A stretch of DNA of 64,000 nucleotides from Auanema rhodensis. Lineage: Eukaryota; Animalia; Nematoda. Location: the NCBI GenBank assembly GCA_964057225.1, contig OZ059899.1:15190001-15254000 (forward strand), in the 5' to 3' direction. Positions 12,344-17,679 of this stretch are shown here, one piece after another. The notes under the pieces were generated by a model. It was not told the origin of the DNA. It did not search any database and was given only the letters and a program-made list of their open reading frames with translations. How positions within the stretch are numbered: position 1 is the stretch's first letter; each line of letters begins with the position of its first letter. Made by a program: the position numbers and the translations under genes.

Positions 12344-12990
12344 ATGAATCAAGTATGTAATGTATAGAGGATCATTAAGCTATCTTCTTTTATTTGTAGG
12401 AAAGAGAACGAAGTGACTCTGGAGCCTTTGAGCCAAATTTTGTTTCTGACTTATCTGTCAACTCCAACTCTTCTGTTAGCCCATCGTCTTCATCGTGCTC
12501 ATCTTCTGCCACCTCATCATCCCGAAATCACCAAATGCCTACTACCTCAGCGGATTGCTTAGTTTCAGATGAAGAATTAGCTCGAATTTCTGTTAAACAA
12601 CTCAATCAAAGGCTTCAAGTGATTTTTTCTATTTGGAAGCAAGGCACATTCTAGTTCAATTTTCAGGGACAGGATCGTGACATTGTAAGCCAGTTTAAGC
12701 AAAAGCGCCGAACTCTTAAGAATCGTGGTTATGCTTTAAACTGTCGTGTTCGAAGAATTGAAACTCAGCTTAATCTTGAATCTGAAAACATGCAGTTAAA
12801 AACTGAGGTATATCATTATTATGCCTTCCTGTATTTTCGTTTACTATAGAACATATCTTTGCGTCAAGCCTTGGCTGAACTTCAACATCGGCTTCAATAT
12901 TACGAGTCTACTGTTAGTTATGATTTCTACGTACCTATCCCTCCCAATAGTACCCCGGGAAATATGTGGGCTTCTCCAAACACAGTTTGA
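12344..12990 (+). CDS. maf-1: Maf-family bZIP transcription factor
   Basis: Four exons joined by GT-AG introns give ..SDEELARISVKQLNQRLQ|GQDRDIVSQFKQKRRTLKNRGYALNCRVRR.., the Maf extended-homology plus basic region. Not represented in frame in the ORF track. The start codon could lie further upstream. Confidence 0.92.
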
Positions 12991-14193: not shown

Positions 14194-14513
14194 TTATGAA
14201 GTCATGGCTACACCTTCTCTTTACTCTCGTTACTGTAACCTAACTTTTCAAATTCTTCCTTATCCATCAAGCCGTGATCCATTCGGCATTGGAAGTAACT
14301 TTTAGCCAACTCTCTACATTCGCTATTTAATTGCTTCTTTTCATGAAGGCAACACATATATCTAAATGATATAGAAACTCATTACTTTGTTATGAACTTT
14401 AAATCTGACTTCAGCATTTCCAACTTGCAAGTTCCTTCATGATCTAAAGGAAATGACCCTTTCAAGGGAGCAGATACAGTATTAACTCGTTGGAACGGCC
14501 CAGCTTGTGCCAT
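14194..14513 (-). CDS. cox-19: Cytochrome c oxidase assembly factor COX19 (twin CX9C)
   Basis: Two exons: MAQAGPFQRVNTVSAPLKGSFPLDHEGTCKLEMLK|YMCCLHEKKQLNSECRELAKSYFQCRMDHGLMDKEEFEKLGY..; KGSFPLDH and the twin CX9C are diagnostic. Confidence 0.95.
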
Positions 14514-14660
14514 CTAGGAAAACATATTTTACGTAGACCTCAATTAATCAAAAAGATAACTACTAATGGTTCACAAACCATAAAACAAAGAAATAGATTA
14601 TAAAACAAGTTTTATGAAAAATAAAAAACATATTCCAACTAAATCTATAATGTGAAAAAT

Positions 14661-14834
14661 CTAAATTTCTCGTCCTGCTTCCTTCTGAATCTGTACATAT
14701 TTATTCCAAGATTGAATTGGAATATCAGGCCGAGGTTTGGTTTCTTCCCATCTTTGATAACAATATGCGGAAAGTAAAGCCGTTAGTAGACTAGTGCCTA
14801 ATATAGCTTGCTGAATTTGAGACTTCGTGACCAT
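14661..14834 (-). CDS. Unknown 57-aa single-pass membrane microprotein
   Basis: Intronless ORF MVTKSQIQQAILGTSLLTALLSAYCYQRWEETKPRPDIPIQSWNKYVQIQKEAGREI*, AAA-ATG context, one hydrophobic helix, co-oriented between two small genes. Confidence 0.7.
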   Translation of the reverse strand: MVTKSQIQQAILGTSLLTALLSAYCYQRWEETKPRPDIPIQSWNKYVQIQKEAGREI

Positions 14835-14867
14835 TTTGTGAGAAAAAATGAAAGCTACAATAGAATC

Positions 14868-15289
14868 TTAATCAGATTCAATAGAAATTTCCTCTGCTTC
14901 AAGATGTGCCCAGCGCCTTTGATCACTTAAACGTAATCGGGTACCCTAAATTAAACATTGTACGGTTCATATTTAAACCTAACTTACGGTCAACTGTCCG
15001 AAAGATATAGAATCTTCTGCCCAATAATATGTGTTCGATAAACGAGGCCAATTACGATAAAGATATTCACGAGAAGCGTCACTTCTTCTCAAATGGCAAA
15101 AGCCTAAGTAGGCACTTCCAGCTGCTGCAAGCTCAAAAGCCACAAGGCCGAATACACTTTTTTTAATTAATTGGGCCAGCCTTAGTTAATAAATAGAACT
15201 AAAATATAAAAATTAAAAAACGCATTTATTACTAAGACTTTTTTTTAAATGGAAATGAACGAAAGATGATTTGTTATGTTAACTTCCAT
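14868..15289 (-). CDS. CEBPZOS-like small membrane protein
   Basis: Exons give ..LAQLIKKSVFGLVAFELAAAGSAYLGFCHLRRSDASREYLYRNWPRLSNTYYWAEDSISFGQLT|GTRLRLSDQRRWAHLEAEEISIESD*, resembling CEBPZOS as recalled (KK..G....EL....GAY..F..M......R......P.....YY..........R..DQ..W). First exon and start are uncertain. Confidence 0.7.
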
Positions 15290-15486
15290 TCAAATCTTCA
15301 AGCTACATCATATAAGAGATAATATATCGTGTACGCTATATTAACTCCAATTTTATAAAGTTGCATATCTTATGGAAAATACAACTTATGATCAAATACT
15401 TTAAATAAATTTAAAATTGATTAAAATTATATTTGAAAATAAAATAAAAGTTCCAAATACGTAAAATACCGTTTATATATATCAGC

Positions 15487-15494
15487 GGCGCGAA
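15487..15494 (-). promoter_or_regulatory. E2F/EFL-1-type site TTCGCGCC in the divergent ctf-8 / CEBPZOS-like promoter
   Basis: GGCGCGAA about 47 nt upstream of the ctf-8 ATG in otherwise very AT-rich DNA. Confidence 0.55.
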
Positions 15495-15540
15495 GTCAAA
15501 ATATTGAAGTTCAACAAAATTCTCAGTTCCCGTTAAAACA

Positions 15541-16009
15541 ATGCAAGTGCATCTTATTAAGAATGAGTAAGTTTGTTAAGTGTTTGAGAATCTGATATAT
15601 TTTAAGAAATGGTCTTGATGAATGGGTTCTAATCGAGATGCAAGGTACACTCGACAATGGTGGTTTCAACTTGAGTGACGAAATGATAGGCAAGTGCTTT
15701 AATTTTCTCCATAACTACAGTGTCTTTCAGGGAATTTGGCATGGAGAAAAGATGACTCTGAAGCTCTACTTCTTATTGGTCATCATCTTTTAGACGGGAA
15801 GGTTGGAACTTCATAATATTAATCTACTTTACACAATTGTTCAGTTATCCGTTTTGGAAAAGCCTTTCCTAGTCACCGAGCCAAACAATGAAAATGGAGA
15901 GAAATCTTTATTAGTTAAAGCCATCATTCGACGAAGAATTGTTTTTAAAAATAGACCAAAACCTATTGTAACAAAGACTTTAGTAAAAAAGTCAACTTTA
16001 TCAAAATAA
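15541..16009 (+). CDS. ctf-8: Ctf8 subunit of the Ctf18-RFC clamp loader
   Basis: MQVHLIKNE|NGLDEWVLIEMQGTL..IGNLAW..ALLLIGHHLLDGK|LSVLEKPFLV..AIIRRRIVFKNRPKPIV; requires a GC-AG intron at 15690-15730. Confidence 0.93.
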
Positions 16010-16058: not shown

Positions 16059-17679
16059 TTATTTATTTTTCTCATAATTAGTTAAAAGAGGCCGGAACGT
16101 CAAGGTAGTTTTCAATGTTATTTCATCTCCACATACATTTTGTAAGTCAATCCGGAAATATGCGAATAATAAGTCTATCATTAGATAAATCTGAAATCAT
16201 TCATCTTCCAAGATCTACTTTAACTATCGAGAAACCTGAGCAAAGTTGTAGAGAAGTGTAACTGCAAAGTAAAAATTAGCATTTCCTGAGCCAACAACTA
16301 TCCACATATGCCACATCACAGGCATCAAAACAACACAAGTGATCATCATACCACCAAGAAGAAGTACAAAACGAACAGGTTCTGGAAAAAATTGGTTACC
16401 ACAATAGTGCAAACATGAAATACGTTTCCAATATTTTTCTAAAGTTGGAATAAGAGCCAAGTATACGGAACCGTAGTTTAAGGTTGGGTATGTTGAAAAT
16501 ATTGCAATGAGAAGAAGCGATAAGAACATATGTAGATGGGCATCTTTCCTGAAAAACTTATTATCTAGAAAGTTCAAACGTAAGCTCAGGAACAAACCTT
16601 ACTGCAAATGTGAGAGGAACTATGTAGAATAATAAACTGAATTGACATACTGCCAAGTAAAATTGACGGAATTGTGGAAATACTTGAATGAAAAAGTACC
16701 AGAATACTCCACTATTCGGGTTAAGATCATCCATTTTTAGCCTAAAAACGACATTAAAAAAGAAACATTGATAAGAAGCATACATTGAAACATATGTAGC
16801 TTGAACAAAATTCCAGTTGAATCCATTAAGAATGTAGTTAAGTACAGCAAAACTTATAGAACCAGCTATGAGTATTAAGACAGTTGAAATGCGGTTTTTA
16901 AGTGAAGGAAATCGAAGAAAAACAGATCCAATTAGAGCAACGGGGTATAATCCAAAATTAGCTAGTAGAGCTAAGCTCAAAGTTGTCCATATGAATGAGC
17001 CTATAGAAAGTGCATTATACGAATAAGTTGAAGCATTCATAACATACCAGAACAAAAGAAATAAACAAATGCTGCTGTAATTAAGTTATAAAATGATGAA
17101 ATGCTGTATATACTTGATGAAAAAATAGTAAAGGGATTAAGCAAATAACTGAAAAGTTGAAGATATATGAGTAAATTTGGAAATTTGAGCTGACCATTTG
17201 AAAACGATCCAAGGGATGTTTTGATTAACATCCAATATTAGTGTACTTCGTAATAATAGGAAAGCTGTAAAGCAATCAAACATACAGAAAATGACAAGTA
17301 ACAATGCAGGTGGTAAACTAAGAAATGGCGAAAAGACACGAAGAATAATTGGTTGCTAAAAAAGTAAGAAAATGACATGAAAAATGACTCGAACTCACGA
17401 AGAGGACCAGATCTCCATCATAAGGACTAACGCCATCTCGGAGCATGGCAACTCCATCCTGGAGTCGACGAAAGTTAACAAGTGGGCTCGTTAACTCAGG
17501 TCTCGAAGAGAGCCAATTTTGACCACAAGCATAGGATATGAGTCTAATAGCTATGGATATAATGCTTATCCTGTAATTCGAGGACTAAATATGAAAAAAG
17601 ATATTATGAAAGAATTATTTGTAGGGCGGGAAGGTTTAAGCTTGTATGCTAAGTATTTCCTTACTTAATCAACCGCCAT
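16059..17679 (-). CDS. pigu-1: GPI transamidase subunit PIG-U
   Basis: RPELTSPLVNFRRLQDG..GVSPYDGD, YLLNPFTIFS, DLNPNSGVFWYFFIQVFPQFRQFY, WHMWIVVGSGNANFYFAVTL. Start exon inferred. Confidence 0.93.

What the first reader, a model, noticed from the sequence alone, without database searches (positions are those of the whole stretch)
14194..15289. Hidden three-gene microprotein cluster with a 33-nt intercistronic gap
Seen: CEBPZOS-like gene, 57-aa ORF and cox-19 are co-oriented on the minus strand, none in the ORF track. Only 33 nt (14835-14867) separate the first stop from the next ATG, with no polyA signal but a TTGTAG acceptor at 14855. The gap to cox-19 looks like a typical SL2 operon: CATAAA about 100 nt before the acceptor at 14514 and a TATCTT (UAYYUU, Ur-like) near 14555. 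Known: COX19 is a complex IV assembly factor and CEBPZOS is a small mitochondrial protein. Inference: a mitochondrial microprotein operon whose first two cistrons are dicistronic or resolved by mutually exclusive (SL1-type) trans-splicing.
Basis: partly seen in the sequence, partly recalled or inferred. Interest (0 to 1): 0.75.

Follow-up and report, generated by a model that had tools for sequence, protein, structure and literature searches.

The report
Nematode mitochondrial microprotein operon, CUG start
Three tiny genes for likely mitochondrial proteins sit head to tail in this roundworm exactly as in C. elegans and nine other nematodes; the first has no ATG start codon but an invariant CTG, and it runs almost straight into the second, which suggests that one messenger RNA makes both proteins.

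Summary
On the minus strand lie a two-exon CEBPZOS-like gene (15179-14868), a 57-codon ORF (14834-14661) 33 nt later, and a two-exon COX19 gene (14513-14208).

- **Conservation:** the same order occurs in 10 other nematode loci, including C. elegans, where the middle gene is annotated as F45H11.11. The cluster is real but not new.
- **Middle ORF:** it is always about 57 aa and is under strong purifying selection. It matches no known family.
- **First gene:** no species has a usable ATG. Homology always begins at CTG-GCN, and CTG is invariant in 10/10 species although synonymous sites are saturated. The context is -3 purine, +4 G. The protein has 0 Met in 792 residues, and its mRNA is poor in ATG.
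- **Junction:** its stop lies -1 to 39 nt from the next ATG in seven species. In four strongylids the 0.6-2 kb gap has intron-like ends.

Best reading: a dicistronic mRNA with a CUG-started first cistron, the second reached by leaky scanning. cox-19 follows as an ordinary SL2-type operon gene (147-nt spacer). No RNA data were available, so every RNA-level step is inferred. In Drosophila, CEBPZOS is likewise dicistronic, with UQCC3.

The parts
15198..15200 (-). Best 3' splice (probably trans-splice) acceptor upstream of gene A: ttttatattttag|TTC, AG at 15200-15199, exon would start at 15198
   Evidence: Read from sequence. A second, poorer AG lies at 15182-15181. No ATG occurs between either acceptor and the CTG.
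15177..15179 (-). CTG, proposed non-AUG start codon of gene A (context a-g-g CTG G). An in-frame TAA lies at 15188-15186, two codons upstream.
   Evidence: CTG is the first homologous codon in 10/10 nematodes, while 8 other invariant-Leu columns use 4-6 codons each. In-frame stops lie upstream with no ATG between them and the CTG in 9/9 species checked.
14988..15179 (-). Gene A (CEBPZOS-like) exon 1, 64 codons, with an N-terminal hydrophobic helix
   Evidence: The nearest Atlas cluster is 'Protein CEBPZOS' at 0.95.
14946..14987 (-). Gene A intron, 42 nt, gtaagt...tttag
   Evidence: The intron position is shared with C. elegans, C. briggsae and C. angaria.
14868..14945 (-). Gene A exon 2, 25 codons plus stop TAA (14870-14868). 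The gene totals 89 codons.
   Evidence: The gene is 88-90 codons from CTG to stop in all nine species modelled, and exactly 89 in seven.
14835..14867 (-). 33-nt gap between the gene A stop and the ORF57 ATG. It has no ATG and no poly(A) hexamer. It contains TTGTAG, a possible acceptor with AG at 14856-14855.
14661..14834 (-). ORF57: a conserved 57-aa protein, orthologue of C. elegans F45H11.11. Helix 4-32 is the hydrophobic stretch and probably a transmembrane helix; a proline-rich loop and helix 43-52 follow.
   Evidence: phmmer found 6 clear homologues, E 4e-14 to 5e-6, with names. The alignment is ungapped with 14 invariant columns. The model has pLDDT 80. pN is 0.08-0.39 against pS 0.73-0.94.
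14514..14660 (-). 147-nt intercistronic region holding CATAAA at 14616-14611, a U-rich tract with TATCTT at 14558-14553, and acceptor ttttcctag| with AG at 14515-14514, directly before the ATG
   Evidence: The geometry matches C. elegans (160 nt, AATAAA 50 nt after the stop, acceptor directly at the ATG) and C. angaria (144 nt, acceptor 3 nt before the ATG).
14410..14513 (-). cox-19 exon 1
   Evidence: 85-88% identical to exon 1 of the C. elegans 85-aa CHCH gene and of other Caenorhabditis and Pristionchus species.
14208..14361 (-). cox-19 exon 2, after a 48-nt intron (14409-14362); stop TAG at 14210-14208
   Evidence: Weak Pfam hits to Pet191_N (6.8e-5) and CHCH. The twin CX9C motif was read from the sequence. 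67-82% identical to other nematodes.
15638..16009 (+). Ctf8 gene, transcribed divergently from gene A. About 440 nt (15199-15637) is left for a shared promoter.
   Evidence: Pfam Ctf8, E 0.0012, matching the C-terminal end of the profile. Ctf8 has the same position and orientation in strongylids and Pristionchus.

Best explanation
This is the local copy of an old nematode transcription unit. It encodes three small proteins that are probably mitochondrial, and it starts from a promoter shared with the divergent Ctf8 gene.

The primary transcript is probably processed into two mRNAs:

1. **A dicistronic mRNA.** Its first cistron is the 89-codon CEBPZOS-like gene. That gene has no AUG and starts at a conserved CUG in a good context (-3 purine, +4 G). 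Because a CUG catches only some scanning ribosomes, and the cistron holds almost no AUG in any frame, the remaining ribosomes scan on. They start at the first AUG, that of the 57-codon ORF, 33 nt past the stop. Reinitiation after termination may add to this where stop and start overlap.
2. **A separate cox-19 mRNA.** It is released by 3' end formation about 50-70 nt after the ORF57 stop and by SL2-type trans-splicing at the acceptor that abuts its ATG.

Shown here: gene order, conservation, purifying selection, absence of ATG, invariance of CTG, depletion of Met and ATG, and junction geometry.

Inferred: every RNA-level step, namely trans-splicing, one mature mRNA for cistrons 1 and 2, CUG initiation and leaky scanning. 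The mitochondrial role of genes A and ORF57 is also inferred.
For: **Conserved cluster**
- The order A-ORF57-cox19 occurs in the window, C. elegans, C. briggsae, C. angaria, Pristionchus fissidentatus, four strongylids and Gnathostoma. An environmental nematode contig carries A followed by an ORF57-like ORF before it ends.
- Flanking PIG-U, Ctf8 and bZIP_Maf genes are also syntenic.

**Both small ORFs are coding**
- pN is 0.08-0.39 while pS is 0.73-0.94, which is saturated.
- Lengths are fixed at 88-90 codons for A (89 in seven of nine species) and 57 for ORF57.
- Each is single-copy in this genome.

**CUG start**
- No in-frame ATG lies between the upstream in-frame stop and the first homologous codon in 9/9 species.
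- That codon is CTG in 10/10 species. CTG makes up only 15% of other Leu codons, and every other invariant-Leu column uses 4-6 different codons.
- The next codon, GCN, varies freely at its third base.
- -3 is a purine, or the last AG of a splice acceptor, and +4 is G in all species.
- No upstream ATG exon is consistent or scores well across species, and N. brasiliensis has none within 600 nt.
- Database models disagree about the start: a C. elegans call that begins mid-exon, partial models in Pristionchus and Parascaris, and one-codon ATG exons in C. briggsae and C. nigoni.

**Dicistron and leaky scanning**
- The distance from stop to ATG is -1 (C. elegans, TAATG), -1 or 2 (Pristionchus), 0 (C. 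angaria), 2 (C. briggsae), 4 (environmental contig), 33 (window) and 39 nt (Gnathostoma).
- This is too short for the roughly 100-nt spacer of ordinary operon processing.
- In four strongylids the gap is 571-2153 nt. It begins 6-27 nt after the stop with a donor-like site in the top 1-4% of all GTs (P 0.013-0.066 per species). It ends with a strong acceptor 2 nt before the ATG.
- Gene A has 0 Met in 792 residues, against 16 in 448 for ORF57. It has 4 out-of-frame ATGs against 12.8 expected from the protein sequence and GC3. Each of those opens a short ORF that ends inside A.

**cox-19 as an SL2-type cistron**
- The spacer is 147 nt, with a poly(A)-like hexamer 45 nt after the stop and an acceptor abutting the ATG, much as in C. 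elegans.
- The genome carries SL2 RNA genes.

**Parallel in flies**
- Drosophila CG42371 (CEBPZOS) is annotated as dicistronic with CG15386 (UQCC3) (bioRxiv 10.1101/2022.04.24.489283, supplementary file 2).
Against: - No transcript, spliced-leader, ribosome-profiling or peptide data could be consulted, so no RNA-level step is shown.
- The significance values for Met and ATG depletion and for codon invariance treat species as independent. The true number of independent lineages is about 5.
- Once the lack of Met is given, the out-of-frame ATG deficit is modest (4 against 12.8).
- C. elegans, P. tenuis, T. colubriformis and H. placei each keep one out-of-frame ATG in cistron 1.
- A tiny upstream ATG exon cannot be excluded:
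  - C. briggsae and C. nigoni models use ATG|gtttgt...cag|CTG.
  - C. elegans has ATG|gtgcac 147 nt upstream.
  - The window has ATGAT|gtagct at 15311-15307, with donor score 3.0.
- The window has a usable-looking acceptor (TTGTAG) inside the gap. The strongylid acceptor 2 nt before the ORF57 ATG could equally be a trans-splice site.
Confidence: 0.5

Rival explanations
1. This is an ordinary three-cistron operon. ORF57 gets its own mRNA by trans-splicing at the acceptor in the gap (AG at 14856-14855 here; 2 nt before the ATG in strongylids). Because no room is left for a normal 3' end, this processing competes with production of gene A mRNA, as in SL1-type operons.
For: - TTGTAG lies 20 nt before the ATG.
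- Strong acceptors lie 2 nt before the ORF57 ATG in four strongylids.
- The genome has SL1 and SL2 genes.
- SL1-type operons with abutting poly(A) and trans-splice sites are known in C. elegans (established knowledge).
Against: - No poly(A)-like hexamer lies in gene A's last exon or in the gap.
- In Caenorhabditis, Pristionchus and the environmental contig the stop and start overlap or lie 0-4 nt apart. Any acceptor would then sit in coding sequence, without a pyrimidine tract.
- This model does not explain the lack of Met and ATG in gene A, nor the donor-like sites just after its stop in strongylids.
Confidence: 0.2
2. Gene A starts at a normal AUG carried by a very small upstream exon that gene finders and this analysis mostly miss. 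ORF57 is then translated by termination-reinitiation at the tight stop-start junction, or from its own mRNA.
For: - C. briggsae and C. nigoni models have a one-codon ATG exon 41 nt upstream.
- C. elegans has ATG|GT 147 nt upstream of the acceptor that abuts the CTG.
- UAAUG and UGAUG overlaps, as in C. elegans and Pristionchus, are classic reinitiation signals in viruses (established knowledge).
Against: - Candidate ATG exons are not conserved in position. They score below real donors (mostly under 5.0) and are absent within 600 nt in N. brasiliensis.
- In the window the good acceptor (15199) leads into an in-frame TAA.
- This model does not explain why the Leu codon is CTG in 10/10 species at saturated synonymous divergence.
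- Reinitiation after an 89-codon ORF is normally inefficient (established knowledge).
Confidence: 0.2
3. Gene A and ORF57 are made as one fusion protein, by stop-codon readthrough or by splicing out the stop, as some database models suggest.
For: - In the window the 33-nt gap is in frame and free of stops. The same is true for C. angaria (0 nt) and Gnathostoma (39 nt).
- Predicted proteins in T. colubriformis, N. brasiliensis and an unnamed entry fuse the two.
Against: - The frame relation is not conserved: spacings are -1, 0, 2, 4, 33 and 39 nt.
- ORF57 always begins with ATG-GTN and is always 57 codons in the seven aligned species.
- The fused models use different, mutually inconsistent junctions.
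Confidence: 0.03

Closest known systems
C. elegans chromosome I locus with F45H11.11 (NP_001348676.1) and its two neighbours (81-aa call and 85-aa CHCH gene)
   Same: - It is orthologous gene for gene: A is 57% identical, ORF57 54% and cox-19 75-88%.
- Order and strand relations are the same, and the intron positions in A and cox-19 match.
- The spacer before cox-19 is 160 nt, against 147 nt here.
- A bZIP_Maf gene lies downstream on the opposite strand.
   Different: - In C. elegans the stop of A overlaps the ATG of F45H11.11 (TAATG), whereas here 33 nt separate them.
- The C. elegans call for gene A on record starts mid-exon at a non-ATG codon (81 aa).
- The upstream neighbours differ: there is no PIG-U or Ctf8 in C. 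elegans.
Drosophila dicistronic transcript CG42371 (CEBPZOS orthologue, 87 aa) / CG15386 (UQCC3 orthologue, 77 aa)
   Same: - A CEBPZOS-family microprotein shares a transcript with a second small protein (UQCC3 is a single-pass membrane protein from my own knowledge; ORF57 has one hydrophobic helix), annotated for respiratory-chain assembly (bioRxiv 10.1101/2022.04.24.489283, supplementary file 2).
- The same table lists no C. elegans orthologue for either fly gene.
   Different: - The fly CEBPZOS protein starts with Met.
- The order of the two fly cistrons was not available to me.
- ORF57 shows no detectable similarity to the UQCC3 Pfam model.
- Flies have no trans-splicing and no third cistron.
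SL2-type operons of C. elegans and relatives
   Same: - The genes are co-oriented.
- The spacer is about 100-150 nt, with a poly(A) hexamer soon after the upstream stop and a U-rich tract.
- An acceptor abuts the downstream ATG.
- SL2 RNA genes are present in the genome.
   Different: Only the ORF57-to-cox-19 junction fits. The A-to-ORF57 junction (-1 to 39 nt) is far too short for this mechanism.
Leaky-scanning dicistrons with a weak or non-AUG upstream start. Examples from my own knowledge, not tested here: Sendai virus C'/P with an ACG start, and Drosophila sloth1/sloth2.
   Same: - The upstream cistron has a poor start codon.
- Few or no AUGs lie before the downstream AUG.
- Both products are small proteins, probably of one pathway.
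   Different: - Here the upstream cistron is not overlapping and has no AUG alternative at all.
- The arrangement is embedded in a trans-spliced operon.
- It is conserved across nematode clades III and V (clade placements from my own knowledge).

Membership tests
CEBPZOS (Pfam PF14969 / DUF4508; InterPro IPR037764) | Significant match to the family profile | tested here: not met
   - hmmscan of the window exons found no hit at E up to 1.
- PF14969 searched against the whole genome found no hit at E up to 10.
- Ten nematode homologues gave no hit at E up to 10.
CEBPZOS (Pfam PF14969 / DUF4508; InterPro IPR037764) | Overall likeness: about 80-90 aa, an N-terminal hydrophobic helix followed by a basic stretch, and a conserved aromatic YY(W) motif | tested here: inconclusive
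   - The nearest ESM Atlas clusters are 'Protein CEBPZOS', at 0.95 with 203 shared features and at 0.94 with 186. COX6C-like clusters score equally.
- The length is 88-90 codons in the nine species modelled.
- I made no alignment-based test against true CEBPZOS sequences, because none was available by reference.
COX19 (twin-CX9C CHCH protein) | Twin CX9C motif and CHCH fold | tested here: met
   - C29-x9-C39 and C50-x9-C60 were read from the two exons.
- Pfam CHCH (E 0.015) and Pet191_N (E 6.8e-5) both fall below their curated cut-offs, because the exons were searched apart.
COX19 (twin-CX9C CHCH protein) | Orthology to a recognised COX19 | tested here: inconclusive
   - It is 75-88% identical to the C. 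elegans 85-aa CHCH gene at the syntenic position.
- A C. elegans gene named cox-19 exists, but I could not confirm that it is this 85-aa gene.
- The KGSFPLDH motif matches COX19 from memory only.
SL2-type operon | Co-oriented genes with about 100-nt spacing between the poly(A) signal and the downstream trans-splice acceptor | tested here: met
   For ORF57 to cox-19, CATAAA lies 97 nt before the acceptor, and the spacer is 147 nt. For A to ORF57 the feature is not met: the spacing is 33 nt.
SL2-type operon | SL2 on the downstream mRNA | not testable with these tools
   SL2 RNA genes exist in the genome, but no transcript data were available.
Dicistronic mRNA translated by leaky scanning | Weak or non-AUG start on cistron 1, and no or few AUGs before the AUG of cistron 2 | tested here: met
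   - No ATG start was found, and CTG is invariant.
- There are 0 ATGs between the CTG and the ORF57 ATG in the window, C. briggsae, C. angaria and the environmental contig. C. elegans has 1.
Dicistronic mRNA translated by leaky scanning | Both cistrons on one mature mRNA, with ribosomes initiating at both starts | not testable with these tools
   This needs cDNA and ribosome-profiling data.
UQCC3 (Pfam PF15141), considered for ORF57 | Match to the family profile | tested here: not met
   - PF15141 found no hit in the genome at E up to 10.
- Seven ORF57 homologues scanned against Pfam gave no UQCC3 hit.
- A profile search against PDB sequences and Foldseek both found nothing.

The most novel reading that the evidence does not exclude
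The CEBPZOS-plus-partner dicistron may be ancient, shared by insects and nematodes. ORF57 would then be the 'missing' nematode UQCC3, diverged beyond sequence recognition. Nematodes would fix the ratio of the two proteins through an obligatory CUG start on an AUG-free first cistron. That would be a conserved cellular gene with no AUG start at all, and a rare case of true dicistronic translation nested inside a trans-spliced operon.
Probability: 0.25. Interest if true: 0.8.

Novelty: new variant of a known kind. Interest (0 to 1): 0.62.

Why it matters
- **A mixed operon.** Nematode operons are normally resolved into monocistronic mRNAs. A junction of -1 to 39 nt, conserved across distant nematodes, would be a genuine exception: two proteins from one mature mRNA.
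- **A gene with no AUG.** A conserved cellular protein gene that relies only on a CUG start would be one of very few known. It would explain why its annotation is broken or missing in most nematode genomes, and why orthologue tables list no C. elegans CEBPZOS.
- **A testable link.** It ties two uncharacterised membrane microproteins to a complex IV assembly factor. Everything can be tested directly in C. elegans, with existing data types and simple genome edits.

Tried and rejected
- **ORF57 identity.** The word-based protein search found nothing. The Atlas search (best 0.80), PDB sequence searches with the single sequence and with a profile, Pfam and Foldseek on a pLDDT-80 model assigned no family.
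- **Gene A exon search.** The word-based search with exon 1 alone was blank. Only a profile of exon peptides retrieved nematode homologues.
- **Paralogy of A and ORF57.** hhalign gave probability 2.4%, so I rejected it.
- **PIG-U as first gene of the operon.** This was my early reading, and I rejected it. PIG-U ends near 16224, and a Ctf8 gene on the other strand lies between it and gene A. The AATAAA at 15230-15225 is therefore not a PIG-U signal.
- **Readthrough fusion.** Rejected, because the frame relation is not conserved.
- **Transcript evidence.** The Logan contig L017 proved to contain the intron, so it is genomic DNA or pre-mRNA. ORF57 of the window is not on record.
- **H. placei 'MAS...' protein.** It seemed to show an ATG at the CTG position, but the genome has CTG there. 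The M comes from how the model was translated.
- **Gnathostoma.** The first exon of gene A could not be located.
- **Literature.** Text searches for the C. elegans gene names and for CUG or non-AUG starts in C. elegans found nothing on this locus.

- Joined spliced proteins were never searched. Exons were searched apart and by reference.
- In scripts, exons were strung together only transiently, to count codons and ATGs.
No alignment-based test against them was made.
Full report
**What is there**

The window comes from a nematode genome. The genome (G000, 181 Mb) carries a tandem array of canonical SL1 RNA genes and four SL2 RNA genes.

Three small genes lie on the minus strand between 15200 and 14200:

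- **Gene A:** exon 1 is 15179-14988, followed by a 42-nt intron. Exon 2 is 14945-14868, with stop TAA at 14870-14868.
- **Gap:** It holds no ATG and no poly(A) hexamer, and contains TTGTAG with its AG at 14856-14855.
- **ORF57:** a 57-codon ORF at 14834-14661.
- **Spacer:** 147 nt, with CATAAA at 14616-14611 (97 nt before the acceptor), a U-rich tract with TATCTT at 14558-14553, and the acceptor ttttcctag| directly abutting the next ATG.
- **cox-19:** 14513-14410, a 48-nt intron, then 14361-14208. It encodes 85 aa with a twin CX9C motif.

Upstream, a Ctf8 gene on the plus strand (15638-16009) is transcribed away from gene A, and PIG-U lies beyond it on the minus strand. Downstream, a bZIP_Maf gene converges on the plus strand at 12562-12816. 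The unit therefore starts with gene A and ends with cox-19.

**All three genes are real and old**

A word-based search for the middle ORF was blank. A full phmmer scan then found 57-aa homologues in C. elegans (F45H11.11, NP_001348676.1), C. briggsae, Parelaphostrongylus and Gnathostoma. It also found gene models in Nippostrongylus and Trichostrongylus that fuse it to gene A.

I fetched the encoding contigs and searched them exon by exon. The same order, A then ORF57 then cox-19, appeared in these species:

- C. elegans, C. briggsae and C. angaria
- Pristionchus fissidentatus
- P. tenuis, N. brasiliensis, T. colubriformis and H. placei
- Gnathostoma spinigerum

An environmental nematode contig carries A followed by an ORF57-like ORF before it ends.

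Other points on conservation:

- ORF57 aligns without gaps, with 14 invariant columns.
- Gene A is 88-90 codons in the nine species modelled, and exactly 89 in seven.
- Non-synonymous differences are few (pN 0.08-0.39), while synonymous sites are saturated (pS 0.73-0.94).
- Both genes are single-copy in this genome.
- PIG-U and Ctf8 upstream, and bZIP_Maf downstream, recur in strongylids, Pristionchus and/or Caenorhabditis.

So the cluster is not new. C. elegans carries gene calls for all three genes.

**What the proteins are**

- **cox-19:** the assignment is sound at the level of motif and synteny, but Pfam hits are below cut-off because the exons were searched apart.
- **Gene A:** it is 'CEBPZOS-like' only by protein-language-model features. 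The nearest clusters are 'Protein CEBPZOS' at 0.95 and 0.94, with COX6C-like clusters alongside. The Pfam model PF14969 finds nothing.
- **ORF57:** it matches no family, solved sequence or fold. The model shows one long helix (residues 4-32; from the sequence this is the hydrophobic stretch, so probably a transmembrane helix), a proline-rich loop and a short second helix. It is not a paralogue of gene A.

**The unexpected part: gene A has no ATG**

- In the window, an in-frame TAA lies two codons upstream of the first homologous codon. The 89 codons contain no Met.
- In nine of nine species examined, homology begins at CTG-GCN. An in-frame stop lies upstream, and no ATG lies in between.
- The environmental contig also has CTG-GCG.
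- CTG is used in 10 of 10 species. The eight other columns with invariant Leu in these genes use 4-6 different codons each, and CTG makes up only 15% of other Leu codons.
- The following Ala codon varies freely at its third base.
- Position -3 is a purine in the eight species where the CTG is not directly preceded by a splice acceptor. In C. elegans and C. briggsae the CTG abuts a strong acceptor. A spliced leader ending in GAG or AAG would supply the purine there; this step is inferred. Position +4 is always G.
- A scan for upstream ATG-bearing exons found no candidate that is positionally conserved or well scoring. N. brasiliensis has none within 600 nt.
- Database models reflect the problem. 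The C. elegans call starts mid-exon (81 aa), the Pristionchus and Parascaris models are partial, and C. briggsae and C. nigoni use a one-codon ATG exon.

The simplest reading is initiation at the CUG.

**The A-to-ORF57 junction**

| Species | Distance from gene A stop to ORF57 ATG |
|---|---|
| C. elegans | -1 nt (TAATG) |
| Pristionchus | -1 or 2 nt |
| C. angaria | 0 nt |
| C. briggsae | 2 nt |
| Environmental contig | 4 nt |
| Window | 33 nt |
| Gnathostoma | 39 nt |

- In the four strongylids the distance is 571-2153 nt. That gap opens 6-27 nt after the stop with a donor-like site in the top 1-4% of all GT sites in the locus. The chance of so good a site in a random 30-nt window is 0.013-0.066 per species.
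- The gap closes with a strong acceptor 2 nt before the ATG. If it is spliced out, 8-29 nt would remain.
- Such spacing leaves no room for the usual cleavage plus trans-splicing, which needs about 100 nt.
- The frame relation varies between species, which speaks against a readthrough fusion.

**Depletion of AUG in gene A**

- Gene A has 0 Met in 792 residues over nine species. ORF57 has 16 in 448 (Fisher 7e-8, not corrected for relatedness).
- Out-of-frame ATGs number 4, against 12.8 expected from the protein sequences and GC3 (Poisson 0.004).
- Each of those ATGs opens a short ORF that ends inside gene A.
- In the window, C. briggsae, C. angaria and the environmental contig, the ORF57 ATG is the first ATG after the CTG.

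This is what a downstream cistron reached by leaky scanning predicts. Separate mRNAs do not predict it.

**Mechanism proposed**

The primary transcript starts in the roughly 440-nt region shared with Ctf8. It is probably trans-spliced at 15199|15198 or left capped there.

It then yields two products:

- a dicistronic A+ORF57 mRNA that ends shortly after CATAAA;
- a separate SL2-trans-spliced cox-19 mRNA.

On the first mRNA, a fraction of scanning ribosomes start at the CUG and the rest start at the ORF57 AUG. Reinitiation may add to this where stop and start overlap.

Gene structure, conservation and sequence statistics are shown. All RNA and translation steps are inferred.

I put the composite model at about 0.5. 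Its parts stand at:

| Claim | Probability |
|---|---|
| Real conserved cluster | 0.97 |
| One mature mRNA for A and ORF57 | about 0.7 |
| CUG start | about 0.65 |
| Leaky scanning as the main route | about 0.5 |

**Relation to what is known**

- The ORF57-to-cox-19 junction is a textbook SL2-type operon junction.
- In Drosophila, CG42371 (CEBPZOS) is annotated as dicistronic with CG15386 (UQCC3). The same table lists no C. elegans orthologue for either gene (bioRxiv 10.1101/2022.04.24.489283, supplementary file 2).
- This raises the possibility that the dicistron is ancient and that ORF57 is a diverged UQCC3. The UQCC3 Pfam model gives no support.
- I found no paper on this nematode locus or on its start codon.

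**Limits and omitted steps**

- No transcript, ribosome-profiling or proteomic data were reachable.
- The statistics treat species as independent.
- Spliced proteins were never searched as joined sequences. Exons were searched apart and by reference, and they were strung together only transiently inside scripts to count codons and ATGs.
No alignment-based membership test against them was done.
- The other note from this scan on the same window (s1-397790) describes ORF57 as an unrecognised single-TM peptide. This work agrees, and adds its orthologues.

Noticed in passing
window 15638-16009 (+), 16227-17055 (-), 12562-12816 (+): The microsynteny block PIG-U, Ctf8, gene A, ORF57, cox-19 is shared with strongylids and Pristionchus, and the converging bZIP_Maf gene with Pristionchus and Caenorhabditis. 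Ctf8 and gene A are divergent, with about 440 nt between them, which suggests a bidirectional promoter.
   Followed up: partly
G000:C3:6.74-7.10 Mb (L001-L006): There is a large tandem array of SL1 RNA genes. Copies are often 252 or 504 nt apart, which is too short to hold a 5S rRNA gene in each unit as in C. elegans. All copies score just below Rfam's SL1 gathering score (54-62 bits against 75), although they carry the canonical 22-nt leader.
   Followed up: no
L020:7380-7430 (Pristionchus fissidentatus): The last coding exon of gene A is split by an intron that appears to start with GC (..cgtag|gcatgt..) rather than GT. This was inferred from the annotated protein and the reading frame.
   Followed up: no
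L021:1-4116 (JGI sample 3300052883): An environmental contig carries an uninterrupted 1182-aa ORF, an AATAAA-containing spacer of about 195 nt, then an intronless gene A, and 4 nt later an ORF57-like ORF. It is either a spliced polycistronic transcript from a metatranscriptome or DNA from an intron-poor nematode. If it is RNA, it shows gene A and ORF57 together on one spliced molecule.
   Followed up: partly
P0002, P0005, P0006, P0020 (database proteins): Several public nematode gene models fuse gene A to ORF57 (Nippostrongylus, Trichostrongylus and one unnamed entry), using mutually inconsistent junctions; one Parascaris gene A model is only labelled 'CHCH domain-containing'. UniRef names such as 'CcmF_C domain-containing' and 'ATP synthase F0 subunit 8' for these entries look spurious.
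   Followed up: partly
window 15225-15230 (-): AATAAA lies 24 nt upstream of the best acceptor of gene A. It cannot belong to PIG-U, because Ctf8 intervenes. It is probably chance in AT-rich DNA.
   Followed up: partly
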